DNA from: Mizuhopecten yessoensis
Taxonomy: Eukaryota
Direction of reading: 5' to 3'
Length of the DNA: 64,000 nucleotides
Assembly (NCBI RefSeq): GCF_002113885.1
Contig: NW_018479853.1
Coordinates: 1-64,000 of the forward strand
Every line of letters starts with the position of its first letter. The first letter of the stretch is position 1. Shown piece by piece: positions 1-47,430 of this stretch. The position numbers and the translations under genes were made by a program. The notes beneath the pieces are model-generated. The model was not told the DNA's origin. It saw only the letters and a program-made list of their open reading frames with translations, and did not search any database.

Positions 1-164
1 TTCAGTTATTTTATTTGTACAAACAAGACACATCTTTTTTTAAAAATTAACAATTAGATATAGATGTTGCATGTTATATTATTAGCTTTTTGGTATTGTA
101 CAATGACAGTTGAAATTCATTTGAAAATATTCATAATTTGTTGTTAATTCCACCCTAAAATACG

Positions 165-22159: not shown

Positions 22160-22470
22160 GTTTAATTGACTGGTTGGTCTGTCTGTATCTGTGTCGAGGC
22201 GATGTGTGTTGTTAAATTGACTGGTTGGTCAGTTTGTATCTGTGTAGAGGCGATGTGTGTAGTGTAATCGACTGGTTGGTCGGTCTGTATCTGTGTAGAG
22301 GCGATGTGTGTAGTTTAATCGACTGGTTGGTTGGTCGGTTTCTGTGTAGAGGCGATGTTTACTGGTTGGTCTGTCTGTATCTATGTCGAGGCGATGTTAA
22401 CTGGTTGGTCTGTCTGTATCTGTGTAGAGGCGATGCTAACTGGTTGGTCTGTCTGTCTGTGTGTAGAGGC
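22160..22470. repeat. 39-48-bp repeats spanning the end of the gene B CDS and the start of its 3' UTR
   Basis: actggttggtctgtctgtatctgtgtagaggcgatg repeated about 7 times. Confidence 0.8.
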
Positions 22471-25400
22471 GGGCGGGGAAGATATGTCCACGTCTTTGGC
22501 CGAGATCTTGTTCCGTATTTCACTCGTTGAAGAGCACTCGTTGTCAATCTTTTCACCCGTCACTTTATTTCTTTTCTTATTCCATCTTTCAGAAAGTGGA
22601 AAAAAAGGAAATAGATTTGTTTCATTTATGCATTTAATGTTTGATTTTGTACGAAAATATGTACATAAATTAGTTTAAACAAAACGCGAATAACAGATAA
22701 ATATTTTTGATAAGTTTGATATATCGTTGCAATGTTATTGTAAAATTCAGTGTAGTTATACTGTTTAAACCTCATTTTTTCTAAACTACAATTTACAGGT
22801 ACTGATTATAATTATCGTTCTGTGCCTAATCCAATTGTGTCTTAAACGCATTAAAATTGATTTGAAATGAAATTCGATAACTCGTACATGTTTTCATATG
22901 AAGTTATCCAATCTGGGCTATTTCTACTTTGAAATATCTGTCCGAACGTTTGTTTGGTCTATGATTAGTTTGTGACATGAAATGTTACCTGTATAAGAAG
23001 AACGCGGCCACACCGAGGATAGCGATGAGGAAGAGAGCTCCTAGTACCCCACCAATAACTGGCCCGGAGTTATCGGAGTTATCGGAGTTATCGGAGCTCG
23101 CCTCCCCGGCTTCACTGGCCTCCCGACCTGTGGCAGAACCTGGAACCTTTCGACAAATATAGATAGTGTGGTGGTGTAATAGGATCATATTTATCACTTA
23201 TGTCAAAACTATTTCTTTCTTTGTCATCAAACCTGTTAAGAGCTAATAGTAGCCATCAAGAGTTATCTCTTTGGCTAAATAAGACGGAAATAACTCGTCT
23301 GTTTTCAAACACTTACAGACATAAATTTACAATGATTTATTTGAGTAAGAAGAAGGTGTTACCTTTGTTTCCATTCGACACAATTCTCTCTGTACACGTG
23401 GAAGGAGCTTGCTGGTAATCGTAGACACGTTGTAGGTTATTTCCATGTCAAAAACCATGCTAAAATAACAAAATCCATTTAGGTACGGTAGATAAATCCG
23501 TATATATAGTCAATATGTAAAAAAATGAAATGTCTCGTTCGGCACATGTTCATCTTGGCCAGATACTTCACGTGACCATTCGAAGATCAGTGATATGCAT
23601 GCTAATTCTGAAGTGAATATGTATAAACAATATATTCTTATACGCTTGTGTAATAATATAATTGTTATTTTACACATTTTAATAACCGTCATCGTCATTG
23701 AGTAACTTTTGCAAACATTCAGGCGGACAACAAAGATATTGATGAGAGTATTACCTCACTAGGATATATCGATTTATAGCGACACATTATCCTTCCCTCC
23801 CCCCATTAATCATGTATACATTCCTACTTACACACTATCGTCGAGTGATACCGGACGAAGACTGGTAGGATGGACCGTTTGTTCTAGTATTCGTTTTACA
23901 TCTGCAGCAGTCAACTCCTTCCTGTTGATGCCAGAGAGCTGTACCCGGGTAATGTTTGTTCCTGCCAAATATATAATTCCCTTATAATACGTTCTTATGA
24001 ACTGGTCAAAATTTCTCAATACCAAGTAAGCTAGATTACATGTTGCTAAACTATATACCTATTCTTAACATCTAAAAAGCTACATAAAATTCAGTAAGTT
24101 TTCAAAGCAAACTTAGCATTTAAATGTAGCCACATAAATTGTGGAACACTATAGAACATTGTAGTTATTGCAATCACCAAGTAATCTACAAAGTGTGCAT
24201 CAAATGTTATCGAACAATATTTATTACCTCAATTGAATATGCCCATTTACGTAATAATAATAAGTGCGAAACATTATGGTGACAAACAATCTTCGTATTA
24301 CCGCTGTACGCTTTAACATATTACCATTTATAAGGCTGGAAGCCATCTTAAAGTGACATGATGCACCTGTAGTATTTTGGCTTGGTGTTGTGGGCGTTGC
24401 TATGTTGGACGTTGTGGCTTCAGGCGACGTACTATTTACCAGCCAAGAAGATGTACTTTTAGTGTCGGATGTTGCTGTTTTTGAAGAAACATTTTGTGAA
24501 ACTGTTTGTGGTGTTGAGGAAAACAGCGTATTATTAATATTATGTCCTTGTGTTGAAGACGTAGTTTGTTCCTGTGTTGTTAACGTCAGTGCTTTCTTTG
24601 TTGTCGATGTCGATCGTTTTTGTGTTGTTGACATGGATTGTCTTTGGGATGTTGACGTGTCTAGTTTCTGTGCTGATGACGTAACTGCTCCTTGTATTGT
24701 AGACGGAGTTGATGACGTCACGGCTGTTTGTGTTGACGTTTTGGAAGTGACAATGGTTGTCTTCGTTGATGGAGGCAGCGCAAACGTCTCGCAGGTCTGT
24801 CCTAAAGTACCAGAAATATATATGTGTATATTTTTCTTAGAATATAAGGTAAATGCGTGGAGGAGCAAGCAAATCAGACGTTTCAGACTCTAAAAACAGA
24901 TGCAATCAAACAGGCCGCATGTATCGGAAGAGTCCTCCACTAACATGAAATACATACACAAGTTGAGGCCGGATAACAAACGCTTGTATACTTACAGTGC
25001 GATGTTGCTAAATACTGTAATTTGCGCTGAATCATAATTGGCTTGCATAATAATGTTATATATTGATAGATTTAACACTAAATATTAGTTTCACTGAACA
25101 ATATACTAAAAATTTTAGAAGTTGTCATTATCCAATCTTTTCAACTTTGTGGTAGTTATAATACTACAAGTTTTTCGAATTCATTGGAATTTTTTCAGAG
25201 ATTTTGATGGCAAACAAATATCAAACAACCGAAATGTTCAACATTTTAGAGAATACGGTATTTGATCAATAGTTTGTGAGATTAAACCAAAGTTCATGTT
25301 CTTATGACCAAAATAGACACGGAAAACAACGTACATGTTGTACTATCTCATCAAAGTACTTTTAACAAATACCATTTATTTTTTTATAAAGCATTATATA

Positions 25401-28400
25401 TGGCGAGTCGCTGTACTGCGAATGAGCAAATCGGATAAAGCTTGCCAAAAGGTGCTCTTTTAGCTCAATATAATTATTTTGATGCGATACTACAAATTGT
25501 TCGCAATAAATCGTTAATAATTTTCTTTAATTGAAAACGTTCATATTGAATGGTACATACCATTCAGTATAATAACATACCTGTCCATCCGTTCAGACAG
25601 GTACATAGGTATTTGTTGGTTGGGATATCTGTACAAGTACCACCATTGTGACAAGGTTTTGTTACACAGGAGTGGTCTGGTATACTACACCGGAATCCCA
25701 CCCATCCTGTCGGTACAAACAGGCTATTTATCCAGTTATAATAGACAGGTGTATTTATTAATGGAGTAGAAAGTTTGACGGAGACACACAATGTTGTCCT
25801 AAATAATGTTATATGTCGAATCATAAAAATAAAGTTTGATGAAGATAATAATTCGATAATAAATGCTTTTAATTAAATGACACCCACACTAATGTCATCC
25901 ATTTTACCAATAAGGTAGCCAGCAACAACTCTGTCTACACACACATATCTTTTGTCTCTTTAAGTTAAATACTTTATAAACATATGCATATATTTTGTTC
26001 CAGAAAGGTAACTTTATATAATACGAATATTCATAGGTACATCGTTTATCTCTACAAGATAAAAACTATGTAATGTCGGGTACGCGTATAATGTCTCTAC
26101 ATTATCAACGCTATATGATACCTGCTAAGCATATATATTTGTTTTTACAAGATTTAACCAACATTTAGCCGGTAAACATATATTAAGTGTCTACAATGTT
26201 AATAAAAGATAATATCGAAAGTATTATAATTTGTATAACCAGATAAACACCATATATACCTGGTAAGCATAGTTTTTGGCCGCTACTACTACAGTTGTAC
26301 TTGGGTAGCAATGGTCGACACGATACGGAACAGTCGCCATAGTAATGCTGCTCACACACAATTCTGTACTGTATAACCAATCTAAAAACAAACAGCACGT
26401 GTTTCCCATACCTCAATAATATTAAACACAATACAATCCTATTTCCGTTGAAAAGATGCATTTTTTTTTTTTTACAATTTCGATATTTTGATGTACGTGA
26501 ATGATCGGCCAAATTATCTTCCTATTCTAACATAAAATCTACCCCGATCCTTTCTACTGTATGTCGACTATGATTCTTAATTATGACCAAACAAACGTCT
26601 ACAAAAGTCTACAAACGAAAACCTACCCTAAATGTTTCGACGAAAGGTCTACCTCGAACACTGTAAATGGAGGTCAGCCGTCAATCCTGACAGCCGAAGA
26701 TCTATCGCGACCTCAACATCCTAAGGTCTACGTCAATCCAAGCATCCAAAATCTACCTCAACCCTACCATTCTAAGGTCTACCCTGATCCTTTAAGCTGA
26801 TGGCCTATTCAAAATATTGAAAAGAAAGTATTAAACAGATAATTACCATTTAATGTCTGCTCCAATCCTTACGAATGAAGGTCTATCCTAACCCTTACAG
26901 CCGTAGGTCTATTTAAAGCCATGCTATATTGTACTTACTCAGCTGCCCCTCCTTTGATAGGCTTGGTGGTATTGTGCAGCAGTATGCCGTTTTGGTCAAC
27001 AGGTCCTGTTATTTGGTGATCTACTGATCCGATTAGGTCATCACTACCCAAAAAAGTCGTCCCATCTCTGTCAAGTACGTCTACTTTCACGTGTATTCCG
27101 GACTAGTTACAGGAAAAGGAAAGGTGCACGAAACACCGAGAGAATGTGAAAAATAGGACGCATTATGATAAATACAACAAATGATGAAGGTAACACGATG
27201 GTGTTTAACACAACGAGAAATAAAGAAGAGTGACATGTCCCGGAGTGAAGTGTACACTGTCATTGATGAATAATATAGCAATGTGGCTATAGGTGTAGCA
27301 TTCCCAAAATGATGAGTTTATTCCAAATGTTTAGCAATTGTTGTTTTATATACACAGTACCTACCCCCATTGATGTTTTATATACACAGTACCTACCCCC
27401 ATTGATGTTTTATATACACAGTACCTACCCCCTTTGTTGTTTTATATACACAGTACCTACCGCCCTTGTTGTTTTATATACACAGTACCTCCCCCCCATT
27501 ATTGTTTTATATAAAAAAAAAGTACCCTGTCCCTCCCCCCCCCCCTCCTCAATTGTTGTGTTTCATATAAAAAGTACCTACCCCCCAATTGTTGAATGTC
27601 TTTACGATGGGATTAGGCATGGTTCTGATGACATTGCCGAACCTGATGGTGTCCGTATTGTCGTACACCTCTGTCTTCACACTACCGTACTCACACCTTA
27701 ATAACATAAGCAGCAGTCGTAATCAAGGCTGCATACGTGTAAAGGACGTAACTTTTGTTGTTACACTTGGGCATCATCAATAGATGCAATATATATATAT
27801 GTGTACACAGTAAGGTGCAATACAAGTATGTAGTGAATGTAACGAAGACTGTAACAGGCAGACACAATCAACATATTTCATTCACGAAGCTGATGTTTAT
27901 CACCTAATAAGTCATAAAAGCAACTAACAATTTATGTATTTATAAAATAAAATCGTATAGAGTTCCTATTAAATGGGGTGTTATTCGCTGTTATTGCGAA
28001 AATCTACAACAAAACATACCATAAGAATCGTCCCGAGTACAGTTTGCCAATGCAGATAAACTTGTAGTTATGATATGAGACAATGGGTTAGCCACAGGTT
28101 TAATTACTCGAGTTACACAATAACTATGTCGATGGAGATGAGTAACACTCACCCAGAACTGGACAGAAGTCCCACACATATTTTGAAGAACGGATCACAC
28201 TCGTTGGCACCACATCCGCTGGTACTCAGACTCTCACAGCACTGGCCTGTGGCGTCTTTGTGTGAGGGGTTGGAGTAAGAGAGAAACCGGATGTACACCG
28301 TACCACCAGCCATTACCTGTCAGGAGTATCGGGTATTCTTACTGATAATGTGTGAGGATGAATCAAACAAAAGATAGGTTAAGGAGTCATGTCTGAATGT

Positions 28401-29150: not shown

Positions 29151-30390
29151 ACGAAAAAAAATATACCGTAACGAGTTTTCTACGTCTCGTATAAAATGGA
29201 AAGGAAGTTAATATGCTTGTAAAACATGTAGTTGTCAAATACACCGATTTCCCCGAAATGTCTTTCGCGAAGTTTAAAAATGTACCGGTATGGCTCTATA
29301 TATATATTGTCCCCATTGTGACGTCATCATATAATCTTTGACGGCTGTGATATTATTTGGTTTTATTACGTCAAATGTTAATTTCTTCGTGTAAAGCTTC
29401 GTGTGTTCTATTAAGTACAATACCGTTTTCCACGACCCTGCCCCTTGACCACGGGTGGCGATCATTGACTCCGGGCACTAATCCTCGTGACTCCATTTCC
29501 TGCAGGCGCTATTCCTCTATGGTTCTGTTTGATTTTAGCTGAAGTGACGTCATATTGCGCTGTCATAACATAATATGTTCGACGTCAAACATGTCTTCAT
29601 GCTCTGCAGTAATAACGAAATAGTCGATTTGGAACAAGAAACGCAAAGGACGGCACAACAAAACAAGTAAGTGTCAAGATCACGAATGCCATGGACTTTG
29701 CGGTTCGAGAAACAGAGAGCGATTCCGATATTGAGATTATGACAATAACTGATCTCGACGATATTGTAAGAGACTTGAATACCTATATTGGAAATTATAT
29801 GGGGAACACTAAAAGTTCGTTGTGTGCGATTGGCAGAGATCCACTGTTATCTCCATGAGGCTCCGGGCGATAAAGACTTAGATATTTTTAATAACCAGCG
29901 TTTAATAAAGACACATCTTACTTTAAACTTCAACAGTTTGGTAACACTAGCCGGGGAAGGGGGAACGTTGTCGTAATACACAAACAGCCCACTCAACAAG
30001 GTTTGTTCAACCTTTTAAAGCTAAAATTTAACAGAGCTCTATCTATCTATTTCTACGAAATTTTATATTATTTTGATATTGATCTTCAATTATATAATAT
30101 TCTATTGTTTTCTACAAATTTAAATAGCGTAAAACGGGCGATAAAATAATAATGAATTATGAAGTCACAATAAGATCGATAATGATCACGTCATGAATAT
30201 GTGTATGTCTTGCCTATATGCGGTCGTTTGTTTAAGACTATGAATAAATAAAAACAATCAACAATGTATATCACGTCATTTGTTTTAACTTTTACAATTA
30301 TTGTTTTGTCAACATACAAAAAGTAGTTGTAGAGGCACACCACGTTCGATCGTCCAGGGGTCAAGGCGCTATCATGCTGACGTCCAGGGG

Positions 30391-33300
30391 TTAAGGCGCT
30401 ATCATGATGACGTCGGGTGTCCAGGCGCCGTGTACTGGTGTCTCACAGTTATGTCCTGAAGTACAATACTGAGTACTAGGAACTTTATCACTACTGTAGT
30501 AAACAATGTATACAGCAGATCTCGACTCACAGTTATGTCCTGAAGTACAATACTTAGTTCTAGGAACTTTATCACTACTGTAGTAAATAATTTATCCAGC
30601 AGACCTCGACTCACAGTTATGTCCTGAAGTACAATAATGAGTACTAGGAACTTTATCACTACTATAGTATAAAATGTATACAGCAGACCTCGACTCACAG
30701 TTATATCCTGAAGTACAATACTGAGTACTAGGAACTTTAGCACTACTATAGTATACAATGTATCCAGCAGACCTCGCCTCACAGTTATGTCCTGAAGTAC
30801 AATACTGAGTTCTAGGAACTTTATCACTACTATAGTATACAATGTATCCAGCAGCCCTCGACTCACAGTTATGTCCTGAAGTACAAGACTGAGTACTAGG
30901 AACTTTATCACTACTGTAGTAAACAATGTATACAGCAGATCTCGACTAACAGTAATGTCCTGAAGTACAATACTGAGTACTAGGAACCTTATCACTACTA
31001 TAGTATACAATGTATCCAGCAGCCCTCGACTCACAGTTATGTCCTGAAGTACAATAATGAGTACTAGGAACTTTATCACTACTATAGTATAAAATGTATA
31101 CAGCAGACCTCGACTCACAGTTATATCCTGAACTACAATACTGAGTACTAGGAACTTTATCGCTGCTATAGTATACAATGTATCCAGCAGACCTCGCCTC
31201 ACAGTTATGTCCTGAAGTACAATACTGAGTACTCGGAACTTTATCACTACTATAGTATACAATGTATCCAGCAGCCCTCGACTCACAGTTATGTCCTGAA
31301 GTACAATCCTTAGTTCTAGGAACTTTATCACTACTGTAGTAAACAATGTATCCAGCAGATCTCGACTCACAGTTATGTCCTGAAGTACAATAATGAGTAC
31401 TAGGAACTTTATCACTACTATAGTATACAATGTATCCAGCAGACCTCGCCTCACAGTTATGTCCTGAAGTACAATACTGAGTTCTAGGAACTTTATCACT
31501 ACTATAGTATACAATGTGTCCAGCAGACCTCGACTCACAGTTATGTCCTTAAGTACAATACTGAGTACTAGGAACTTTATCACAACTGTAGTAAACAATG
31601 TATCCAGCAGACCTCGACTCACAGTTATGTCCTAAAGTACAATACTGAGTACTAGGAACTTTATCACTACTGTAGTAAACAATGTATACAGCAGATCTCG
31701 ACTAACAGTAATGTCCTGAAGTACAATACTGAGTACTAGGAACTTTAGCACTACTATAGTATACAATGTATCCAGCAGACCTCGACTCACAGTTATATCC
31801 TGAACTACAATACTGAGTACTAGGAACTTTATCGCTGCTATAGTATACAATGTATCCAGCAGACCTCGCCTCACAGTTATGTCCTGAAGTACAATACTGA
31901 GTTCTAGGAACTTTATCACTACTATAGTATACAATGTGTCCAGCAGACCTCGACTCACAGTTATGTCCTAAAGTACAATACTGAGTACTAGGAACTTTAT
32001 CACTCCTGTAGTAAACAATGTATCCAGCAGATCTCGACTCACAGTTATGTCCTGAAGTACAATCCTTAGTTCTAGGAACTTTATCACTACTGTAGTAAAC
32101 AATGTATCCAGCAGATCTCGACTCACAGTTATGTCCTGAAGTATAATACTGAGTACTAGGAACTTTTGTCACTACTGTAGTAAACAACGAATTCAATAGA
32201 CCTCGACGCACAGCCATGTCCTGAAGTGGCGGTTGTGTGGGATGTTGGAGAAGGTTTACCTGTCCACTCTGGTGTACACATACAGAAGTGGCGATTGTGT
32301 GAGATGTTGGAAAAAGTTTACCTGTCCACTCTGCTGTACACATACAGAAGTGGTGGTTGTGTGAGATGTTGGAAAAGGTTTACCTGTCCACTCTGCTGTA
32401 CACATACAGAAGTGGTGGTTGTGTGAGATGTTGGAGAAGGTTTACCTGTCCACTCTGCTGTACACATACAGAGGTGGTGGTTGTGTGGGATGTTGGAGAA
32501 GGTTTACCTGTCCACTCTGCTGTACACATACAGAAGTGGTGGTTGTGTGGGATGTTGGAGAAGGTTTACCTGTCCACTCTGCTGTACACATACAGAAGTG
32601 GTGGTTGTGTGGGATGTTGGAGAAGGTTTACCTGTCCACTCTGCTGTACACATACAGAAGTGGTGGTTGTGTGGGATGTTGGAGAAGGTTTACCTGTCCA
32701 CTCTGCTGTACACATACAGAAGTGGTGGTTGTGTGGGATGTTGGAGAAGGTTTACCTGTCCACTCTGCTGTACACATACAGAAGTGGTGGTTGTGTGGGA
32801 TGTTGGAGAAGGTTTACCTGTCCACTCTGCTGTACACATACAGAAGTGGTGGTTGTGTGGGATGTTGGAGAAGGTTTACCTGTCCACTCTGCTGTACACA
32901 TACAGAAGTGGTGGTTGTGTGGGATGTTGGAGAAGGTTTACCTGTCCACTCTGCTGTACACATACAGAAGTGGTGGTTGTGTGGGATGTTGGAGGAGGTT
33001 TACCTGTCCACTCTGCTGTACACATACAGAAGTGGTGGTTGTGTGAGATGTTGGAGAAGGTTTACCTGTCCACTCTGCTGTACACATACAGAAGTGGTGG
33101 TTGTGTGGGATGTTGGAGAAGGTTTACCTGTCCACTCTGCTGTACACATACAGAAGTGGTGGTTGTGTGGGATGTTGGAGAAGGTTTACCTGTCCACTCT
33201 GCTGTACACATACAGAAGTGGTGGTTGTGTGGGATGTTGGAGAAGGTTTACCTGTCCACTCTGCTGTACACATACAGAAGTGGTGGTTGTGTGGGATGTT

Positions 33301-36300
33301 GGAGAAGGTTTACCTGTCCACTCTGCTGTACACATACAGAAGTGGTGGTTGTGTGGGATGTTGGAGAAGGTTTACCTGTCCACTCTGCTGTACACATACA
33401 GAAGTGGTGGTTGTGTGGGATGTTGGAGAAGGTTTACCTGTCCACTCTGCTGTACACATACAGAAGTGGTGGTTGTGTGAGATGTTGGAGAAGGTTTACC
33501 TGTCCACTCTGCTGTACACATACAGAAGTGGTGGTTGTGTGGGATGTTGGAGAATGTTTACCTGTCCATTCTGCTGTACACATACAGAGGTGGTGGTTTT
33601 GTGAGATGTTTGAGAAGGTTTACCTGTCCACTCTGCTGTACACATACAGACGTGGTGTTTGTGTGAGATGTTGGAGGAGGTTTACCTGTCCACTCTGCTG
33701 TACACATAAATAAGTGGTTGTTGTGTGGGATGTTAGAGAAGGTTTACCTGTTCACTCTGCTGTACACATACAGAAGTGGTGGTTGTGTGAGATGTTGGAG
33801 GAGGTTTACCTGTCCACTCTGCTGTACACATACAGACGTGGTGGGTGGTGGTTGTGTGAGAGTTTGGAGAAGGTTGACCCGTCCACTCTGCTGTACACAT
33901 ACAGAGGTGGTGGTGATATGGGATGTTGGTGAAGATTTACCTGTCCACTCTGCTGTACACATACAGACGTGGTGGTTGTGTGAGATGTTGGAGGGGGTTT
34001 ACCTGTCCACTCTGCTGTACACATACAGGGGTGGTGGTGATATGGGATGTTGGTGAAGATTTACCTGTCCACTCTGCTGTGCACATACAGAACTGGTGGT
34101 TGTGTGGGATGTTGGAGAAGATTTACCTGTCCACTCTGCTGTACACATACAGACGTGGTGGGGGGTGGTTGTGTGAGAGTTTGGAGAAGGTTGACCCGTC
34201 CACTCTGCTGTACATGGTTGTGTGGGATGTTGGAGGAGGTTTACCTGTCCACTCTGCTGTACACATACAGAAGTGCAGGTTGTGTGGGATGTTGGAGAAG
34301 GTTTACCTGTCCATTCTGCTGTACTCATACAGAAGTGGTGGTTGTGTGAGATGTTGGAGGAGGGTTACCTGTCCACTCTGTTGTACACATACAGAAGTGG
34401 TGGTTGTGTGGGATGTTGGGGAAGGTTTACCTGTCCACTCTGCTGTACACATACAGAAGTGGTGGTTGTGTGGGATGTTGGTACACGTTCCACCATGGCG
34501 ACAGGGATTGGTCCCACAGGTATCATCTCTGACGTCACAACGGCCACCTTTCCAACCTAAATTTCGACACCAGAGTATCATAAGACAAGAACGATGATTA
34601 GATGTACTGCAAAATGACGTCTTTTAGGCATTAAATAACCCCTGTCGTGGAAACAGATGAACATTTTCAAAAATGTATTTGAGACTACAACATAAAATAC
34701 TAACGATCTTTCTCTGAATATCATGCTCTGGTAGATGTCGGACAAACTGCTTACGGACAAACTTACAACATAACGTTTTCAGAGATCATGACTATGGGCA
34801 GGTATTCATAGAATATTACACTGTATTTTCAGGGTTTGTCCTAAAAACCGTTTTGTCATTGCTAGCACGTGAGGCCAATCGAGAGGCCACCGCAGATCAC
34901 TTTTTGTGTGGATATCTTTTTACGAGTTAGGACGTCACCTATCGCGAGCAGTTCTCATCGCGAGCAAGTGGATAAAATCGAGAGGTGGACTCGAGATTTT
35001 ATCTACGTGCGAGCGATGAGAAAATTGTTCGAATGACAAACACTGAAAATACTGTATGATAAACTATTTATCATCTATAGACTACTATCTTAAGTATTTC
35101 TACATTTAAAAAACTCAACTAAACACTATGTTTTCCAAATGACTTCTAAGCTCAATGGTCAACGATCGTCTGTGACAAACGTAAACAAATAGAAGTTTTG
35201 CGCGGAGGAATACAATGAACCTTAGACTACTACTTAAAACTACGTAGAAAAAATATTTTTTAATCAATCCTATCGTCATTGGTTTTTCCATATGCACATT
35301 TACACCTGAAATGGTGTTGTTATTCTCACAATATTTTTTTGTAACTTTGTATTGATATGTTCATGACGGACTATTTTCTTACGCGGATCACTTTTGTGTG
35401 GAAACTAATTCCGGTTTCGGACGTCATCTGGCGCAAGCGGACGCTCTTTTTTGAGAAAATACATTCCCAAGTGCTGGGGAATGGGAAAATCCCTTCTCAA
35501 CTTCTTCTCATACTGGCAACCAATGCTAATTAATTTATCATGCTACCGGTAGGTGGTATAAAGTAGTATATAGATAATAAATCCATTCCCAAGTACTCCG
35601 CTATTTGTTCTTAAGCCGTTCTCAACTTCTTCTTGAGTATTCTCAGACTGACAACCAGTGATAATGAATTTATTATGCTTCAGGTAGCTGTTTAAGTCGT
35701 ATATAGATGTTACAAAGTTATTTATCATGATAACATTAAGATATACGTTATTTCTTTGAGGATCATTCTAATTATATTACTCAGTATTCCTCGTTGCTTC
35801 GTTGTTACTACCCTGGTTCTCGCCTCGACAAGGTAACATGACTGGGATTTTGACGACGACTTTCGATGGACAGAGGACGCTTACCCTTCTAGAACACCTC
35901 ATTTTATTCGCCTGATACCTTTTCCATAGTCTCCATTTAAGTATTTTCTTTGTTCATATTTTACCCTAGCTTTATCGATTTTGTGTTCAAAATATTGTTT
36001 TGATGACTTTCAAATAATTTTGACAAAGACTGTTGCATAAATGATTCGTAAACCCAACTCCTTTTCCTCTATTGTTTAATCACTTTCTCTTAATTCTTTA
36101 ATTAGAAGTAATAAACTTTACAGCTTTTTGTGTACTTTATAATAAGTATTGTTTAACTCGAGTTGTTCTTTACTGAAATCCGACGTAAGTATCACATAGC
36201 AGCGAAATAGACTATAACAAGGGTACTTGTTCATAAGATGTTTGTATTGCACAAGTGTATTATGCATATTAATAAATGTCACGATAAGTTTAACGCACAC

Positions 36301-39300
36301 TAGTATGCAGTAGACCAGTGTATGTTAAGATGAAGCGCCTCCTCCTTTGTATAGGAAAGTGGACAAGTTCAATACCCAGCCGCACAGTGCACTTTACATT
36401 TTTTGTTTTCTGGGTCGACGGTACGTGGATAACTTACCAGTAATATATATCCTCTGCCCTGCCCTATCACAGCCATACATTAGGTATTTAGGTCGACAGC
36501 ACGTGTATATCTTACCTGTCAGACATGTCCTCTGCCCTCCTCTGTCACAGCCATACATTGGGTATTTGGGTCGGCAGTACGTTGAACAGTCGCCGTAGTA
36601 ATACTCGTCACAAGCGAGTATGTACGCTATGCTGATGCTGTTGATAATAAGTTATATTTATCAATCAAGTATAATGTTTAGAGTTACTTTCACTTACGTT
36701 AATTTAAAATAATCATCTAATCAATCAATAAAATGTGTTCTAGAAGACATCTTCTGTTCCACCGATGAAACCCACCATGCATTGTTTGGTTTGAATCCAA
36801 GTAATGTCACCTGCTTAACGCGGGAACCAGAATAGTAACACCGAAGCCACAAGGCGCACAAATCATAATTTTCCAAATCGTCGATGACATACAGAAATAA
36901 CAACAAGAACTTGATGGCCGCCATAAACGTGCATACTGTCCGACTATCAGCATTCAATACATGTATTTACCTCGGTAAACGTGGTATTCCGGGCAATTAT
37001 CGAATCAGCGGCAACACGTTAACATCATCGGGGGGGAGAAAGAGTGATGTCAATATCAGGATAGGGAAAATTCGTGAAGTCGTCACGCTTATCATGTTGT
37101 AAACCGCCCCATTCAAAGAAAAGCGAAGAAAACTAAATGCATGAAACCCTGTTTACATATAGAGTATACTTGGCAGTTGAAAACACCTATACACCAATAC
37201 TAGCATACGTCAGTGATGGAAATCAGTATATTACATGTAGTATCAAAACACTGTTTTATACACTATCACAGTGTACCAGGACAGTAGTAAACCGAATCAT
37301 ATAATATATAAGATTATACAGCGCGCTGAAAAACATATAAATATCGACAAACAATATCATGTATAGATTTTAGGTTGACATCTATACGGTCATGGGAAAC
37401 AGTATATAAACATCTATACGGTCATGGGAAACAGTATTTAACATCTATACGGTCATGGGAAACAGTATTTAAACATCTACATGGTCATGGGAAACAGTAT
37501 TTAACATCTACACGGTCATGGGAAACAGTATATAAACATCTATACGGTCATGGGAAACAGTATTTAACATCTATACGGTCATGGGAAACAGTATTTAAAC
37601 ATCTACATGGTCATGGGAAACAGTATTTAACATCTACACGGTCATGGGAAACAGTATATAAACATCTATACGGTCATGGGAAACAGTATTTAACATCTAT
37701 ACGGTCATGGGAAACAGTATTTAAACATCTACATGGTCATGGGAAACAGTAGTTAACATCTATACGGTCATGGGAAACAGTATATAAACATCTATACGGT
37801 CATGGGAAACAGTATAGACAGCTACACGGTCATGGGAAACAGTATGTTAACATCTATACGGTCATGGGAAACAGTATGTTAACATTTATACGGTCATGGG
37901 AAACAGTTTAGACAGCTACACGGTCATGGGAAACAGTATGTTAACATCTACATGGTCATGGGAAACAGTATATAAACATCTACCCGGTCTTGGGAAACAG
38001 TATAGACAGCTACACGGTCATGGGAAACAGTATGTTAACATCTATACGGTCATGGGAAACAGTATATAAACATCTATACGGTCATGGGAAACAGTATATT
38101 AACATCTATACGGTCATGGGAAACAGTATATAAACATCTATACGGTCATGGGAAACAGTATAGACAGCTACACGGTCATGGGAAACATTATAGACAGCTA
38201 GACGGTCATGGGAAACAGTATAGACAGCTACACGGTCATGGGAAACAGTATGTTAACATCTACATGGTCATGGGAAACAGTATATAAACATCTACACGGT
38301 CATGGGAAACAGTATTTAACATCTACACGGTCATGGGAAACAGTATTTAACATCTATACGGTCATGGGAAACAGTATATAAACATCTATACGGTCATGGG
38401 AAACAGTATATAAACATCTGCACGGTCATGGGAAACAGTATTTAAAATCTACACGGTCATGGAAAACAGTATATAGACATCTACACGTTCACGGGAAACA
38501 GTATATACATCTACATCGTCATGAGAAACAGTATGTTAACATCTACACGGTCATGGGAAACAGTATATAAACATCTACACGGCCATGGGAAACAGTATTT
38601 AACATCTATACGGTCATGGGAAACAGTATAAAAACATCTACACGGTCATGGGAAACAGTACATAAACATCTACATGGTCATGGGAAACAGTATGTAAACA
38701 TCCACACGGTCACGGGAAACAGTATATAAACATCTAGACGGTCATGGGAAACAATATATAAACATCTGCACGGTCATGGGAAACAGTATGTTAACATCTA
38801 CACGGTCATGGGAAACAGTATTTAACATCTATACGGTCATGGGAAACAGTATAAAAACATCTACATGGTCATTGGAAACAGTATATAAACATCTACATGG
38901 TCATGGGAAACAGTATGTAAACATCTACACGGTCACGGGAAACAGTATATAGACATCTACACGTTCACGGGAAACAGTATATAAACATCTTCACGGGCAT
39001 GGGAAACAGTATATAAACATCTACACGGTCACGGGAAACAGTATATAAACATCTACATGGTCACGGGAAACAGTATATAAACATCTTCTCGGTCATGGGA
39101 AACAGTATATAAACATCTACACGTTCACGTGAAACAGTATATAAACATCTACATGGTCACGGGAAACAGTATATAAACATCTTCACGGGCATGGGAAACA
39201 GTATATAAACATCTACACGGTCATGGGAAACAGTATGTAAACATCTACACGGTCACGGGAAACAGTATATAGACATCTACACGTTCACGGGAAACAGTAT

Positions 39301-42300
39301 ATAAACATCTACATGGTCACGGGAAACAGTATATAAACATCTTCACGGTCATGGGAAACAGAATATACATCTACATCGTCATAAGAAACAGTATGTTAAC
39401 ATTTATACGGGCATGGGAAACAGTTTAGACAGCTACACGGTCATGGGAACCAGTAAATAAACATCTACCCGTTCACGTGAAACAGTATATAAACAGCTAT
39501 ACGGTCATGGGAAACAGGATATAAAAATCTACACGTTCACGTGGAACAGGATATAAACATCTACACCGTCATGGGAAACAGTATGTAAACATCTATACGA
39601 TCATGGGAAACAGTATATAAACATCTACACGGTCATGGGAAACAGTAAATAAACATCTACACGTTCACGTGAAACAGTATATAGACATCTACACGGTCAT
39701 GGGAAACAGTATATAAACATCTACATGGTCATGGGAAACAGTATATAAACATCTACACGGTCATGGGAAACAGTATATAGACATCTACATCGTCATGGGA
39801 AACAGTATATAAACATCTACACGTTCAATACTGTTTCCCATGACGATATAGATGTTTTTATACAGTTTCCCGTGAACGTGTAGATGTTTATATACTGTTT
39901 CCCATGACGATGTAGATGTTTATATACTTTTTCTCATGACCGTGTAGATGTTTATATACTGTTTCTCATGACCGTGTAGATGTTTATATACTGTTTTCAA
40001 TGACCGTGTAGATGTTTATATACTGTTTCTCATGACCGTGTAGACGTTTATATACTGTTTCCCATGACCGTGTAGATGTTTATATACTGTTTCCCATGAC
40101 CATGTAGATGTTTATATACTGTTTCCCATGACGATGTAGAAGTCTATATACTGTTTCTCATGACGATGTAGATGTCTATACTGTTTCCCATGACCGTGTA
40201 GATGTTTATATACTGTTTCCCATGCCCATGTAGATGTTTATATACTGTTTCCCATGACGATATAGAAGTTTATATACTGTTTCCCATGACCATGTAGATG
40301 TTTATATACTGTTTCTCATGACCGTGTAGACGTTTATATACTGTTTCCCATGACCGTGTAGATGTTTATTTACTGTTTCCCATGACGATATAGAAGTTTA
40401 TATACTGTTTCTCATGAACGTGTAGATGTTTATATACTGTTTCTCATGACCATGTAGATGTTTATATACTGTTTCCCATGACGATGTAGATGTTTATTTA
40501 CTGTTTCCAATGACCATGTTGATGTCTATATACTGTTTCCCATGACGATATAGAAGTTTATATACTGTTTCTCATGAACGTGTAGATGTCTATATACTGT
40601 TTCCAATGACCGTGTAGATGTTTATTTACTGTTTCCAATGACCATGTTAATGTTTATATACTGTTTCCCATGACCGTGTAGATGTCTATATACTGCTTCC
40701 AATGACCGTGTAGATGTTTATTTACTGTTTCCAATGACCATGTTAATGTTTATATACTGTTTCCCATGACCATGTAGATGTCTATATACTGTTTCCCATG
40801 ACCGTGTAGATGTTTTTACGACATAATCCCGATTAAACAAGACCTACGCAATAATTTGATTTTAATCATCTCACCATTTACACTATTTATCACAGAGGCA
40901 TTGGACAACAATGTCATTGTTTCATACGTATTTTTCTAACCGTTATATTACCTACAAAACTCAAAAAAATTAATTTTATAAAATATATTCTGTAGATTGC
41001 CTGCTTTTTTTAGATTGATATATATTCATGCCATTCATTATTTATGATATCATTAGCCATGCCGCCACTTAGGGATCAACTGAGCACGATAACTACTCCA
41101 CATGGACGATATGATACAGTGACGGTAAAGTAAACCAATTTCCATGCATACGTTTGATGATTAAATCTTGAAAATTTCTATAATTGTGTAGGGCTTTTGC
41201 TTATAATTGAAGATGTAAATTTTGAATGATATCACATTGCCCGCATATTTTATGGTCTTTAACTAACTTTTTCGTCACACTGCCAGCTTCATTTGATATC
41301 CCAAAGAGGGCATCATTCAGTGCTAAAAGAAAACCCGATACCGCGCAAGACCTTACGGTACAATAATGCCTTACTTAGTTCTTTCTCTACTCGCTGTTTC
41401 GGTGCGTACACTACTTTTGGAGTCAGGAGGTCCCATCGAAAAGGTGAGATCGGATAATTCCTCATTGTCGCCAGAAGTGTCCCTGTCATAGTCCAACTCT
41501 CCTACACTCACCACCAACCCGTTCTAAGAAAGATGAACGAAACACAACATAAAAAATAGCAATAAATACAGTTAACCGAAATGAGTCACACTTCATCCTA
41601 CCATACAGTTGTATGTCACACTGCATCCTACCATACAGTTGTTTATCGCACTGCATCCTACCATATAGTTGTTTGTCACACTGCATCCTACCACACATTT
41701 GTTTGTCACACTGAATCCTACAATATAGTTGTTTATCACACTGCATCCTACCACACATTTGTTTATCACACTGCATCCTACCATATAGTTGTTTATAACA
41801 CTGCATCCTACCATACCGTTGCTTATCACACTGCATCCTACCACACAGTTGTTTATCACCCTGCATCCTACCATATAGTTGTTTGTAACACTGCATCCTA
41901 CCACACAGTTGTTTATCACACTGCATCCTACCATATAGTTGTTTGTCACACTAGTTGTTTATCACACTGCATCCTACCATATAGTTGTTTATCACACTGC
42001 ATCCTACCATACCGTTGCTCATCACACTGCATCCTACCACACAGTTGTTTATCACACTGCATCCTACCATATAGTTGTTTATCACACTGCATCCTACCAT
42101 ACCGTTGTTCATCACACTGCATCCTACCACACAGTTGTTTATCACACTGCGTCCTACCATACAGTTGTTTATCACACTGCACCCTACCATACAGTTGTTC
42201 ATCACACTGCATCCTACCACACAGTTGTTTCGTCCATCAAGGATTCATCGTTGATGATAGGGGTCAAACGTTTTCGAAATCCAAATTGGTTTAAACTACT

Positions 42301-45300
42301 TTTGCAACAGAACGAATGTTGCTTAAAAAACCTTTAATCTAGCGCAGCGGAAACACAAAGCTATATCTTAATGTAAATTAAATAATTGACGTGTAGTCTA
42401 ACTATTAAGATACACTCAAAATATTTCGTTGCTTTAATAAAAATGAATTTTAAAACCTACTTGCATGACATTTTCCTCTTTAAAAACCGTGATTAAAGAA
42501 AGTAGTTAAGAAACTGTTGCCAGTAAAATTTAAACATCATTTTAACAGTCATGGTGTTGGGCCTGATCATATTAATCAGATCCCGGAAATGTTTATAAAA
42601 TAATTTATAGACTATTGAGATTCAAGATTGACATGAAAGTTCTTGAGACTATAATTATTGCAAGTCATCATGTCTTAAACAGATAAAATGGTGCATTTTA
42701 TTGTGACATTGCCTCGGATCTTTTTTCCTATGAAACATACCAAGAAGAAGTTCAACTTTAAAAACATATTCACCGTCGCGGATTTGAAACGGAAGAAAAT
42801 GAAGTCGGATTGTTGATCCAATTTTACAGTTGTTCTGCCACACAAACATCTGGAAAAAAAATAACAACTTATCAACTAACTTTTAACAGCAAGTTCATAC
42901 GAATCCACTATATATCCACAACTAACGAACCTTTATAACACGCTAACATGTATAACCAGTTATCTTGTATAACCAGCTAACTTATATAACCAAGTTACCT
43001 CTTCAACCAGCTACCTGTATTAGCAGCAAGCCTTTATAACCAGTTAACTTGTATTAAAGGCTAATCTGTATAACCAGCTAACATGTATAACCAGTTATCT
43101 TGTATAACCAGCTCACTTGTATAACCAGTTATCTTGTATAACCAGCTAACATGTATAACCAGTAATCTTTTATAACCAGCTAACATGTATAACCAGTAAT
43201 CTTGTATAACCAGTTATCTTGTATAACCAGTTATCTTGTATAACCAGCTCACTTGTATAACCAGTTATCTTGTATAACCAGCTATCTTGTATAACCAGCT
43301 AACATGTATAACAAGTTATCTTGTATAACCAGCTAACATGTATAACCAGTAATCTTGTATAACCAGCTAACATGTGTAACCAGTTATCTTGTATAACCAG
43401 TTATCTTGTATAACCAGCTACATGTATAACCAATTTACCTCTTCAACCAGCTATCTGTATTAGCAGCAAGCCTTTATAACCAGTTAACTTGTATTAATGG
43501 CTAACTTGTATAACGAGCTAAGTTGTATAACTAGCTAATTTTTATAATCAGCTAGCCTGTATAACCTGATACCCTATATAAGCAGCTTACATGCATAACC
43601 AGTTCCCTTTATAACCATCGATATGTCTCTACGACGTCTCATATGTATATTTGGTCAACCGTATATTTTGCTAAGACAGTCGATGAACGGTTTTTGCAAC
43701 AAGGTCATATAACTAAGGTTATCGAGTTTGCAACCTTGATTATAGTATAGGCGTGTTGTCGAACGAGGCCCATTCCTGTGTTTATCTATAAAACCAGCCG
43801 AATATATCTATGGAGAAGCCTTATCATTGAGACAGATTTTATCTTAGTGAACATACTAACTGTGAATCCACTTTCTGCACTGTTGGTCCGACACAAACGT
43901 CGACAGTAGCACCTGTTGTGTCCTGGACTGTGGTGCTAGAATAATCAAGGAGGCGAACCAGCCCCGTTCCCCCTCCACTAACATCTATAACCTGTCAATA
44001 CAAATACAATTTTAAATAAAGTATTTCTAAAACTGCACATTTCTAAAATAATAAAAACGGAGAATGTCTCGCAGTATCAGCTTTAATACAAAATTAATAA
44101 TATATATTTATGACAGTGTTTGACAAATTAACGAAATACTTTTTTATTGGTTTTAATTCGTATTTGTTGTTGAATTAATATTATAAACATACTAAATCAT
44201 CTAAGCAAAGCTTACGCACAAAAAGAGATGTACCAAATAATTAACGCTGAACTTGCATACAAATTGAGAGGTGCAAAATAATACAAAATGAGATTACATA
44301 CAAATTGAGAGGTGCAAAATAATACATAATAACATAACATACAAATAGAGAGGTGCAAAATAATACATAATAACATTACATACAAATAGAGAGGTGCAGC
44401 ATAATAAACACTTACATTCCGTAGAAATAGAGAAGTCCTAAGTAATTAATACTAAGTTAACGCACAAACAGTTGGGTAGTTTGGTTTTGGTTCTATTTTG
44501 ATTAACGTCGTTGTTTAACCATTTAAGGATGTGCCTCCATGTGTGTTGTGTAAGCGTGCATGTGTGTATGTGTGCCGGTACAGGGTATGTTAGTGTACTT
44601 GCCTCCTTGTGTAAACGCCGATCTGATGCCGACTTTATAGTGATATCTCACTGAAATACTATGCCGCATGCACTAAACACAGCATTCCGCCCGGTCATAT
44701 TATACTGACAACGGATGAATCAGTTGCTGCCATTCCCCTAAATGCTGAGCGTTAAGTAGGAAAATAACAACTACCATTTTTAAGGAGTTTGGTATGTCCC
44801 AGCCTGGGGACAGAACCCTTGCATGTCTTCCTCAATTTGGCGAACGTTCAACATTAAAGCCAACGGTGAGGTGTTGCCAAACAAGGCGCTAGGAAATAAA
44901 AGGTATTAAGAAATAGGGAGAAATAGAATAATCCCAAATATTGCAATATGTGCAGCAGATTTATTTTGGTCTCTTTCGTGTCCCCTTGTAAAAGACAAAA
45001 AAGTAAGTCCTAAATTCTGAAGGGGGTTCCCACATGGGTCACCTCTTACGGTTACGATACATGCGGTGGGTAACAGTAGGCTATTCTTTTCTCAATCCCC
45101 GACCTGCAGGTGTGTAGAGTTTGGTACCAAACAGTCATTATTAAATGTGCTTACACACAGAAACAATTAATAATAACCAAACGTATAGTAAAATGATTCC
45201 AAAAAATCTATAATGAGCTTACATACAGATGAGATGCACCAATAAACCATTACAAGGCAAACATACAATAGATAGTCACCAATTAACCCTAACAAGGCAA

Positions 45301-47430
45301 ACATACAATAGAGACTCACCATCAACCATTACAAGGCAAACATACAATAGATAGTCACCAATTAACCATTACAAGGCAAACATACAATAGAGAGTCACCA
45401 ATTAACTATTACAAGGCAAACATACAATAGATAGTCACCAATTAACTATTACAAGGTAAACATACAATAGATGGTCACCAATTAACCATTACAACGTAAA
45501 CATACAATAGATAGTCACCAATTAACTATTACAAGGCAAACATACAATAGATAGTCACCAATTAATCATTACAAGGCAAACATACAAATATAGAGTCACC
45601 AATTAACCATTACAAGGCAAACATACAATAGATAGTCACCAATTAACCATTACAAGGCAAACATACAAATATAGAGAGTCACCAATTAACCATAACAAGG
45701 CAAACATACAATAGATAGTCACCAATTAACCATTACAAGGCAAACATACAAATATAGAGTCACCAATTAACTATTACAAGGTAAACATACAATAGAGAGT
45801 CACCAATTAACCATTACAAGGCAAACATACAAATATAGATAGTCACCAATCTACCATTACAATGCAAACATACAAATAGAGAGTCACCATCAATCATTAC
45901 AAGGCAAACATACAATAGATAGTCACCAATTAACTATTACAAGGTAACCTTACAATAGAGAGTCACCAATTAACCCTAGCAAGGCAAACATACAATAGAT
46001 AGTCACCAATTAACCCTTACAAGGCAAACATACAATAGAGACTCACCATCAACCATTACGAGGCATACATACAGATGAGATGCACCAATAAACCATTACA
46101 AGGCAAACATACAATAGATAGTCGCCAATTAACCATTACAAGGCAAACATACAATAGAGAGTCACCAATTAACCCTAGCAAGGCAAACATACAATAGATA
46201 GTCACCAATTAACCATTACAAGGCAAACATACAATAGATAGTCACCAATCAACTATTACAAGGTAAACATACAATAGATAGTCACCAATTAACCATTACA
46301 ATGCAAACATCCAATAGAGAGTCACCAATTAACCCTAGCAAGGCAAACATACAATAGATAGTCACCAATGTACCATTACAAGGCAAACATACAATAGAGA
46401 CTCACCATCAACCATTACGAGGCAAACATACAAATATAGAGTCATCAATTAATGTTACACCAAACATACAAATAAGTCACCATTTTTCTAGACATTTTCT
46501 TCAAGTTGGTAAGTATGGATTATGAAAAGTTCCTTTTCACACAACCAATAAGATTTTCTGTGACGTTTCGATGACTAATACGATATGTACTCTGTCATCT
46601 TCATCAGACAAATTACCGGTGAAGACAAATTGATGTCGATTCGACTACGCTGGTAGTGTATGTACAATAGTTGTTATATATGTTCCAAAATGACTCGATT
46701 AAGCTAAACTCTCATAGGCTCTCGCACATCTATCACCAAGTATTAAACAAAGGGCAGCTAAATCGAGTCATTTCGGAACATATATAACAACTATTGTACA
46801 TACGCTACCAGCGTAGTCGAATCGACATCAATTTGTCTTCACTGGTAATTTGTCTGATGAAGGTGACAAGGTACATATCGTACTAGTCATCCAAACGTCA
46901 CATAGAAAATTGTATTGGTTGTAAAAAAGAACTTTTCATAATAAATAAGTCACCAATTGATCATTACAAGACAAACATACAAAGAGAGGTTTCGATTTAT
47001 CGACAAACAAGTAGAAATAATTATTAATCACAGAAAAATTACTCAGGTTTTCACTTACCTTGCTGATTCCGTATATTAAGTGAAAGATAAAGCACCAACC
47101 CATCTCAACAGCTCTTACGTTAGATAAGACGAACACAGGAACACATTTATAGTTAGCGTATGTCAACGATTCCAAGGGCAGTGCTCAGAGCTACAAATGT
47201 AAAACTGTTTCTGATAAAGGAACGATCTGCCATGTGTGACGTCGAATTGGGTTATACAAAGTGGGGTTCCCCAGCTTGTTCTATGAAGGTAAGAGATAAG
47301 AAATAATACATGTATATCTGTAGTCATCGCTTACCACTTGTGGAGTCACAATGCATAGTACTATACATACCACAAAGTAAACAACACTTTGATCCAGTAA
47401 GCATACTAAATAATAGCCACCTCCAACCAT
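30391..47430 (-). CDS. Gene C: Delta-like protein (signal peptide, reduced MNNL/C2, DSL, one EGF, short tail), about 265 aa, no TM found, probably secreted
   Basis: Exons 47430-47335 (MVGGGYYLVCLLDQSVVYFVVCIVLCIVTPQV), 43991-43861, 42849-42741 (alternative donor at 42774), 41523-41375, 36637-36516 (CDEYYYGDCSTYCRPKYPMYGCDRGGQRTCLTG), 34556-34431 (CGTNPCRHGGTC...CMCTAEWTG) and 30455-30391 (GHNCETPVHGAWTPDVIMIAP-stop). Phases equal those of gene B; the DSL (122 nt) and EGF (126 nt) exons are the same length as in gene B. Confidence 0.8.
30444..32225 (-). repeat. 84-bp array of the gene C last-exon acceptor plus exon start (…agtattgtacttcag|gacataactgtgag), about 22 acceptor sites
   Basis: AG sites recur every 84 nt from 30456 to 32221; the leftmost continues into unique terminal exon sequence. 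Confidence 0.93.
32226..34480 (-). repeat. 62-bp array of the gene C EGF-exon 3' end plus donor (aacatcccacacaaccaccacttctgtatgtgtacagcagagtggacag|gtaaaccttctcc), about 36 copies
   Basis: The rightmost unit is the real exon end at 34431/34430. It explains all ORFs listed between 32226 and 34600. Confidence 0.93.
34815..35057. mobile_element. Small palindromic MITE-like element
   Basis: Imperfect terminal inverted repeats (tacactgtattttcagggtttgtc / gacaaacactgaaaatactgta) and an internal hairpin. Confidence 0.55.
36410..36515 (-). repeat. Diverged 78-bp duplication of the DSL-exon 3' half plus donor
   Basis: 36438-36515 resembles 36516-36593; a second donor CTG|GTAAGT lies at 36438/36437. 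Confidence 0.85.
37376..40815. repeat. 30-32-bp minisatellite (aacatctatacggtcatgggaaacagtatata) with an orientation switch at about 39827
   Basis: Forward units run 37376-39827 and reverse-complement units (atactgtttcccatgaccgtgtagatgttt) run 39828-40815. Confidence 0.95.
41585..42230. repeat. 30-bp minisatellite (cacactgcatcctaccatatagttgtttat), about 21 copies
   Basis: Direct tandem repetition. Confidence 0.92.
42932..43617. repeat. 17-bp minisatellite (tataaccagttatcttg)
   Basis: Direct tandem repetition with decayed ends. Confidence 0.9.
44255..44430. repeat. About 41-bp repeat (tacaaattgagaggtgcaaaataatac...), 4-5 copies
   Basis: Tandem copies sharing the acatacaaatagagag motif with the array at 45220. 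Confidence 0.75.
44480..44878 (-). mobile_element. tRNA-head SINE, near full length
   Basis: Minus-strand head with A-box-like tggctttaatgttg and B-box-like gggttctgtccc, a (caaa)-type tail, and a second copy at 28783-29150. Confidence 0.65.
45220..46482. repeat. 40-bp minisatellite (accaattaaccattacaaggcaaacatacaatagatagtc), about 30 copies
   Basis: Direct tandem repetition; one more unit resumes after the insertion, at 46943. Confidence 0.92.
46483..46942. mobile_element. Inverted-repeat insertion (about 185-bp arms, about 50-bp spacer), probably Penelope-like-element derived
   Basis: 46520-46705 is the reverse complement of 46757-46941. It is flanked by the 13-bp direct repeat aaataagtcacca (46470-46482 and 46943-46955), and each arm holds a hammerhead motif. 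Confidence 0.7.
46554..46613 (-). ncRNA. Type I minimal hammerhead ribozyme (Penelope-like, very short palindromic helix III)
   Basis: Minus strand reads uuugu CUGAUGA a gaugac[18 nt]gucauc GAAAC GUC acaga, giving the core boxes, a 6-bp helix II, a helix I (uuugu/acaga) and a GUC cleavage triplet. Confidence 0.7.

What the first reader, a model, noticed from the sequence alone, without database searches (positions are those of the whole stretch)
30444..34480. A 4-kb intron built entirely from its own splice sites: about 36 tandem donors followed by about 22 tandem acceptors
Seen: the last intron of gene C (34430-30456) has essentially no unique sequence. Its 5' part is a 62-bp unit (49 nt of EGF-exon end plus GTAAAC donor). 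Its 3' part is an 84-bp unit (intron end plus AG plus the first 14 nt of the last exon). The two arrays fuse directly at about 32225, and every acceptor copy I read keeps AG (ttcag, tttag or ttaag). Inference: any donor-acceptor pair recreates the mature junction WTG|HNCE, so the locus could allow combinatorial splicing or stepwise nested removal of the intron. Otherwise it needs a mechanism that silences dozens of near-identical decoy sites.
Basis: partly seen in the sequence, partly recalled or inferred. Interest (0 to 1): 0.92.

Follow-up and report, generated by a model that had tools for sequence, protein, structure and literature searches.

The report
Scallop intron filled with splice-site minisatellites
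The last intron of a Yesso scallop Delta-like gene really is made only of 36 tandem copies of its own splice donor and 21 copies of its own acceptor, but this is a known kind of repeat ('mirage' minisatellites) that comes and goes at different splice sites in related scallops, and the little RNA evidence available shows only the outermost sites in use.

Summary
Observation confirmed: the 3,975-nt last intron of Mizuhopecten yessoensis LOC110441374 (delta-like) is entirely tandem repeat: 36 donor copies (62-bp unit) fused to 21 acceptor copies (84-bp unit). The functional reading is not supported. GT and AG retention is what chance gives (P 0.27 and 0.49). The in-frame 84-bp unit evolves neutrally and carries stops. 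Only donor 1 with the last acceptor gives the conserved protein. A spliced junction reads AG|GA, so it cannot regenerate a donor. Both RefSeq isoforms, one RNA-like contig and two raw reads use the last acceptor; the donor side was not tested with reads. In three other scallops this intron is 181-1,331 nt, with no acceptor array and one unrelated donor array. Other splice sites of the same gene carry their own arrays, up to about 158 acceptor copies in Pecten. Four more donor arrays lie in this window. These are 'mirage' minisatellites, described in amphioxus and human F7. The missing unique centre looks like a later deletion at a 5-nt microhomology. Earlier notes of this scan report similar arrays elsewhere in this genome, including a two-sided one (not checked by me). 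Minor use of inner acceptors is not excluded.

The parts
47059..47103 (-). Gene C (LOC110441374, delta-like) exon 1, start codon
43861..43991 (-). Gene C exon 2
42774..42849 (-). Gene C exon 3
41375..41523 (-). Gene C exon 4; search query that identified the gene
36516..36637 (-). Gene C exon 5 (DSL domain); its donor is also duplicated (78-bp unit x2.2, 36413-36582)
   Evidence: Pfam PF01414 E 2.7e-4
34431..34556 (-). Gene C exon 6 (EGF domain); its last 49 nt are the exonic part of the donor unit; skipped in RefSeq isoform X2
   Evidence: Pfam PF00008 above cut-off
32223..34481 (-). Donor mirage array: 62-bp unit (49 nt exon end + 13 nt intron start), 36 donors; authentic donor at 34430; inner copies near-identical (13 exact), edge copies divergent
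32221..32227 (-). Fusion point: the last donor unit breaks off inside its exon copy and joins an acceptor-unit end through a shared 5-nt ACTTC; likely deletion scar; makes a hybrid AG without the 70-nt intron end
   Evidence: sequence shown; deletion inferred
30442..32227 (-). Acceptor mirage array: 84-bp unit (70 nt intron end + 14 nt of exon 7), 21 acceptors; authentic acceptor before 30455; unit is 28 codons in frame, with stops in the units starting at 31715, 31631, 30959 and 30623; each inner copy has a donor-like GTGAGT, GTGAGG or GTTAGT 9 nt after its AG
30391..30455 (-). Gene C exon 7, coding part (end of the EGF domain, 20-aa tail, stop)
30143..30390 (-). 3' UTR as far as an RNA-like contig covers it
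   Evidence: run X1 record 1

Best explanation
Two independent 'mirage' minisatellites, tolerated rather than functional. A short tandem duplication across the exon 6 donor and another across the exon 7 acceptor each put their extra copies inside the intron, so the coding sequence stayed intact (follows from the geometry). Each then expanded by ordinary minisatellite turnover (inferred from homogeneous centres, divergent edges and block repeats). A deletion at a 5-nt microhomology later removed the unique middle and fused the arrays (inferred). The spliceosome picks the outermost pair by position and exon context, not by site strength, since the authentic sites equal the array consensus (shown). 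The first donor after unique exon 6 wins, as in human F7 (inferred by analogy; RefSeq X1 agrees). The last acceptor wins (shown for the few molecules seen), probably because only it is followed by unique exon sequence and the 3' end (inferred). Inner acceptors may also be damped by the donor-like site 9 nt downstream (speculative). Low-level mis-splicing and the annotated exon 6 skipping may be a tolerated cost.
For: No selection on GT or AG (P 0.27, 0.49) or on the 84-bp frame (syn/nonsyn/stop 7/18/3 observed, 5.8/20.2/2.0 expected). Orthologous intron: 181 nt in Argopecten and 1,331 nt in Pecten, both without repeats; 863 nt in Ylistrum with a different 31-bp donor array. The exon 6-7 peptide is conserved in all four species. 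The Pecten gene has its own arrays at other sites (58 bp x158 at acceptor 4, 48 bp x65 at donor 5, three copies at acceptor 3). Four more donor arrays lie in the window. RefSeq X1 and X2 both end at the last acceptor. One contig (depth 26) and two raw reads stop fitting at 30458, the last acceptor plus the shared CAG; the contig has 2 further unlike letters, the reads 20 or more. Precedents: PMC3087553, PMC3902484, PMC1557585.
Against: RNA support is thin: one contig and two reads with near-identical starts; the unlike letters were not printed. A 114-nt contig at depth 8.9 lies unspliced inside the acceptor array. Its 31-mers occur about twice in the array, so it could be pre-mRNA or DNA, but also a minor isoform using an inner acceptor. 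Donor choice was not tested with reads. First-AG scanning and co-transcriptional order would naively favour the first acceptor, so the rule that picks the last is inferred, not shown.
Confidence: 0.8

Rival explanations
1. The acceptor array is a real alternative 3' end: donor 1 joins inner acceptors at appreciable levels. This gives proteins with a complete EGF domain and tails of 28-aa Cys-containing repeats, which escape NMD because the stops lie in the last exon.
For: The unit is 28 codons and open in the exon 7 frame; products of 3-199 aa are possible. Inner acceptors equal the authentic one. A contig inside the array has depth 8.9 against 26 for the exon.
Against: Variation is neutral, with stops in four units. 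No contig or read broke at the inner acceptor 30539. RefSeq has no such isoform. Orthologues end 5-10 aa after the EGF domain and have no array.
Confidence: 0.1
2. Nested stepwise removal: inner donor-acceptor pairs splice first, and outer pairs re-splice until donor 1 meets the last acceptor.
For: An inner-inner splice leaves the outer sites intact, so the route is possible on paper. Multi-step intron removal is reported for human dystrophin (PMC4829307, abstract only).
Against: Any early use of donor 1 with an inner acceptor is irreversible (junction AG|GA). In F7 the most upstream of identical donors is used exclusively (PMC1557585). Donor copies are poor acceptors (5 pyrimidines at -20 to -5, against 8-14 for 11 real acceptors in the window). 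The arrays do not pair with each other more than shuffles do (-55.8 against -45.7 +/- 7.6 kcal/mol). A 4-kb intron needs no stepwise removal, and orthologues lack the layout.
Confidence: 0.06
3. Assembly artefact: copy number or the direct fusion is mis-assembled.
For: Only one assembly was seen. Thirteen donor units are identical. From memory, this assembly is short-read based (paper not held).
Against: Both arrays have divergent edge units on either side of the fusion, so the junction is unique over well above 31 nt. Acceptor units differ by about 7 of 84 nt. An RNA-like run from another sample holds array sequence. A chromosome-scale Pecten assembly shows the same kind of array. Exact copy number may still be off.
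Confidence: 0.04

Closest known systems
'Mirage' minisatellites of amphioxus Adh3, globins BflGb6/BflGb9, TnC and PGBD5 (PMC3087553, PMC3902484)
   Same: Tandem copies of an exon-intron boundary; both donor and acceptor types; units of 10-160 bp; most copies keep AG/GT; homogenised centre and divergent edges; normal splicing reported.
   Different: Here both ends of one intron are amplified and fused with no unique sequence left, and copy numbers are higher (36 and 21, against 3-6 for BflGb6). The host is a mollusc.
Human F7 intron 7 37-bp VNTR (PMC1557585)
   Same: Identical donor copies in tandem; only the most upstream is used, although the others work when it is mutated.
   Different: 5-9 copies and donor side only; tested experimentally there, not here.
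Human 6-16/IFI6 minisatellite (Turri 1995; title seen in the reference list of PMC3618361, paper not held)
   Same: A minisatellite that supplies multiple splice donors.
   Different: By its title it provides multiple donor sites in the transcript; here no use of inner donors was seen, and none was tested.
Polyubiquitin UBC dual-specific splice sites (PMC10809524)
   Same: Tandem repeat with a splice motif in every unit.
   Different: UBC units are coding and in frame, with AG|GT sites acting as donor or acceptor and a proven RT-PCR ladder. Here the donor unit is out of frame, the acceptor junction is AG|GA, and no ladder is shown.
Recursive splicing at AG|GT ratchet points (own knowledge; summarised in PMC13196383)
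   Same: Donor copies read CAG|GT.
   Different: They lack a pyrimidine tract, and the real acceptor copies do not regenerate a donor.

Membership tests
Mirage minisatellite | Tandem repeat whose unit spans an authentic exon-intron boundary | tested here: met
Mirage minisatellite | Minisatellite-size unit (10-160 bp in PMC3087553) | tested here: met
   62 and 84 bp
Mirage minisatellite | Many copies keep GT or AG | tested here: met
   36 of 36 and 21 of 21; no more than chance
Mirage minisatellite | Concerted evolution with divergent boundary copies | tested here: met
   13 identical central donor units, edge units with 2-7 changes; degenerate first acceptor unit; identical acceptor pairs at lags 4, 5, 8 and 9
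Mirage minisatellite | Regular splicing at the authentic sites is kept | tested here: inconclusive
Mirage minisatellite | Length variation between alleles or cells | not testable with these tools
   Only one assembly found; the reads tool turns away long repeats
Recursive (ratchet) splicing | Acceptor whose use regenerates a donor (AG|GT) behind a pyrimidine tract | tested here: not met
   Acceptor copies give AG|GA; donor copies have 5 of 16 pyrimidines
Nested splicing / intrasplicing | Intermediates or lariats from inner donor-acceptor pairs | not testable with these tools
   Needs lariat or nascent long reads
UBC-type variable-unit splicing | In-frame coding units under selection, removed in a ladder | tested here: not met
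   62-nt unit frameshifts; 84-nt unit neutral with stops
Delta/Serrate-like DSL protein (host gene) | DSL domain followed by an EGF domain | tested here: met
   PF01414 (21.6 bits on the exon alone, below the 24.2 cut-off; listed for the full protein) and PF00008. No transmembrane tail, so probably secreted (inferred).

The most novel reading that the evidence does not exclude
The fused arrays act as a real splicing device in this gene: nested inner-first removal, or regulated use of inner acceptors that gives a secreted Delta-like protein a ladder of 28-aa repeat tails whose range depends on the allele's copy number.
Probability: 0.08. Interest if true: 0.7.

Novelty: new member of a known kind. 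Interest (0 to 1): 0.22.

Why it matters
As a device it probably does not matter. It has some value as a natural test case. An intron with no unique sequence removes intronic context as an explanation, so a minigene would test directly how a spliceosome picks the last of 21 equal acceptors; the donor-side question was answered for F7. The orthologue comparison also suggests that scallop minisatellites arise at splice sites more often than chance gives (4 of 11 arrays against 0.97 expected, P about 0.02, small sample). How mirages originate is stated as unclear in PMC3087553, and scallop genomes would allow a genome-wide test.

Tried and rejected
Selection on GT/AG: rejected, P 0.27 and 0.49. 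Coding role of the 84-bp unit: rejected, neutral spectrum with stops. Donor copies as AG|GT ratchet points: rejected, no pyrimidine tract. Pairing between the two arrays to loop out the intron: z about -1.3, rejected. 9-nt micro-exons from inner acceptors: inclusion creates a stop two codons after the junction, so not productive. Independent assembly: L001 is the same record. Rfam: nothing at gathering level in the window. The scallop genome paper and Turri 1995 are not held. Two of four RNA runs had no reads on the stretch, so they are no test. The arrays were not sent to read laying because the tool turns away long repeats; only 29900-30622 was laid. My first exon coordinates were off by 1-2 nt for some exons, and the donor read-through was in the wrong frame; one search corrects the read-through and the exons.
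Full report
Observation. The minus-strand sequence and TRF show a 62-bp array at 32223-34481 and an 84-bp array at 30442-32227. A script lists 36 donor copies (34430 to 32259) and 21 acceptor copies at exact 84-nt spacing (32135 to 30455), plus one hybrid AG where the arrays meet. The donor unit is 49 nt of exon 6 plus 13 nt of intron. The acceptor unit is 70 nt of intron plus 14 nt of exon 7. The intron (34430-30456, 3,975 nt) is 100% tandem repeat; the gene span is 63% and the window 33%.

Host gene. Exon 4, searched alone by reference, hit XP_021340167.1 at 100%. The gene is Mizuhopecten yessoensis LOC110441374, delta-like. Isoform X1 has 237 aa. Isoform X2 has 195 aa and skips exon 6. Both end through the last acceptor. 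A spliced alignment gives seven exons with GT-AG introns. Exon 5 is DSL and exon 6 is EGF. The database locus L001 is the same assembly as the window (0 mismatches), so it is not independent. My own model was searched exon by exon and the joined search was left out; the one full-length search used the database protein P0006. Frames across junctions were checked only in local scripts. The N at 19536 was not looked up.

What each splice choice would make. Donor 1 with the last acceptor gives the native end, which is conserved in four scallops. Donor 2 shifts the frame, donor 3 ends in a stop at once, and later donors lie after a stop near 34305. The 84-nt unit is 28 codons and in frame, but four units carry stops. 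Only acceptors 30455 and 30539 reach the native tail; the others give truncated tails of 3-199 aa. So the junction is recreated only locally, not the mature mRNA.

No sign of selection. In the acceptor unit 59 of 84 columns are invariant, so AG invariance has P 0.49. In the scored donor stretch 17 of 32 columns are invariant, so GT invariance has P 0.27. Distinct changes in the 84-nt frame are 7 synonymous, 18 non-synonymous and 3 stop, against 5.8, 20.2 and 2.0 expected. The authentic sites match the array consensus, so strength cannot be what selects them. Thirteen central donor units are identical, edge units diverge, and acceptor units recur in blocks. This is ordinary minisatellite turnover.

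The fusion. If the intron had simply been duplicated at both ends, the last 13-nt spacer would run into the old intron centre and then into the first 70-nt intron end. Instead the last donor unit continues about 24 nt into its exon copy, then joins through a shared ACTTC to AG and a degenerate copy of the exon 7 start. The simplest reading is a deletion at a 5-nt microhomology that removed the centre. This is inference. Divergent units on both sides make a mis-join by an assembler unlikely, though copy number may be off.

Comparative evidence. Orthologues were found in Pecten maximus, Ylistrum balloti and Argopecten irradians, with the same seven-exon structure. The last intron is 1,331, 863 and 181 nt. 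None has an acceptor array. Ylistrum has a different donor array (31 bp x10). Pecten instead has about 158 copies of a 58-bp unit at acceptor 4, 65 copies of a 48-bp unit at donor 5, and three copies at acceptor 3. Paralogue gene B in the window has the same intron (about 780 nt) with no repeat. The window holds four more donor arrays: 158-725, 1677-2150, 15813-16143 and 36413-36582. Arrays therefore appear and vanish at different splice sites of one conserved gene. In the orthologues, 4 of 11 arrays span a splice site against 0.97 expected (P 0.017; TRF alone scored 3, P 0.075, the fourth was read by eye). This hints at a mutational bias, on a small sample.

RNA. Runs guessed to be RNA from six studies hold part of the last exon and UTR. 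I laid four runs on 29900-30622; the arrays were not sent because the tool turns away long repeats. In X1, a 318-nt contig at depth 26 covers 30143-30458 and has two further letters that fit no acceptor copy. In X23, two raw reads stop fitting at 30458 and run on unlike the intron. 30458 is the last acceptor plus the CAG shared with the end of exons 5 and 6, so these are best read as spliced at the last acceptor; the letters were not printed, so the upstream exon is not identified. Nothing broke at the inner acceptor 30539. A second contig (114 nt, depth 8.9) lies unspliced inside the array; it matches no assembly copy exactly, and its 31-mers occur about twice in the array. It may be pre-mRNA, DNA or a minor isoform. 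X21 and X24 had no reads. The evidence is thin, and donor choice was not tested.

Mechanism. Most likely (0.8) the inner copies are tolerated decoys. For donors, human F7 shows that the most upstream of identical tandem donors is used exclusively (PMC1557585). For acceptors, I infer that the last wins because only it is followed by unique exon sequence and the 3' end. Each inner AG also has a donor-like site 9 nt downstream, which may hinder its use; this is speculative, since the real exon has GTGAGA at that place. Recursive splicing fails because the product is AG|GA and donor copies lack a pyrimidine tract. Nested removal needs donor 1 to wait until last, and the arrays do not pair, so I give it 0.06. 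Real use of inner acceptors gets 0.10, and assembly error 0.04.

Known kind. Tandem repeats spanning exon-intron boundaries were named mirages in amphioxus. Both boundaries can be copied, copies keep AG/GT, and splicing is reported normal (PMC3087553; PMC3902484). Four defining features are met here, one is inconclusive and one is untestable. UBC is the functional counter-example (PMC10809524), but its units are in-frame coding modules. Earlier notes of this scan list many such arrays in this genome, including an MPPE1 intron with both ends amplified. They gave me the term and the organism as leads, which I checked; their own loci I did not check.

Verdict. A real and tidy example of a known kind. 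Its only special trait is the loss of all unique intron sequence. Interest 0.22.

Noticed in passing
window 34431-34556 (-): RefSeq isoform X2 (XP_021340167.1) skips exon 6, the exon that seeds the donor array. The three orthologues list one protein each. It may be a cost of the array or just annotation depth.
   Followed up: partly
window 37378-40815: In gene C intron 4, a 32-bp array (about 77 copies) abuts the same unit inverted (about 31 copies) at 39827/39828, which could form a hairpin stem of about 1 kb in the pre-mRNA.
   Followed up: no
window 158-725 and 1677-2150 (-): Two donor arrays in a third DSL-type gene: 34-bp unit x17 (16 keep GT) and 27-bp unit, 18 matches (17 keep GT).
   Followed up: yes
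window 15813-19703 (+): Calumenin/reticulocalbin-like gene (name from the EF-hand look of its exons, not searched): 27-bp donor array x12 (10 keep GT), then a 62/248-bp array of 99% identity that ends at an N (19536, left untouched), so its length is doubtful.
   Followed up: partly
window 36413-36582 (-): 78-bp in-frame duplication of the DSL exon end with a second donor. The same donor carries a 48-bp x65 array in Pecten.
   Followed up: partly
L002:19042-28233: Pecten maximus orthologue: a 9.2-kb acceptor array of about 158 copies before exon 4, much larger than the one reported here.
   Followed up: partly
window about 22100-28300 (-): Paralogue gene B (DSL-EGF) continues into a long Thr-rich stalk, whereas gene C and its orthologues stop soon after the EGF domain and are probably secreted.
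   Followed up: partly
window 30351-30428: A 30-bp repeat (x2.6) spans the gene C stop codon, so exon 7's end was also tandemly copied.
   Followed up: no
   Followed up: partly
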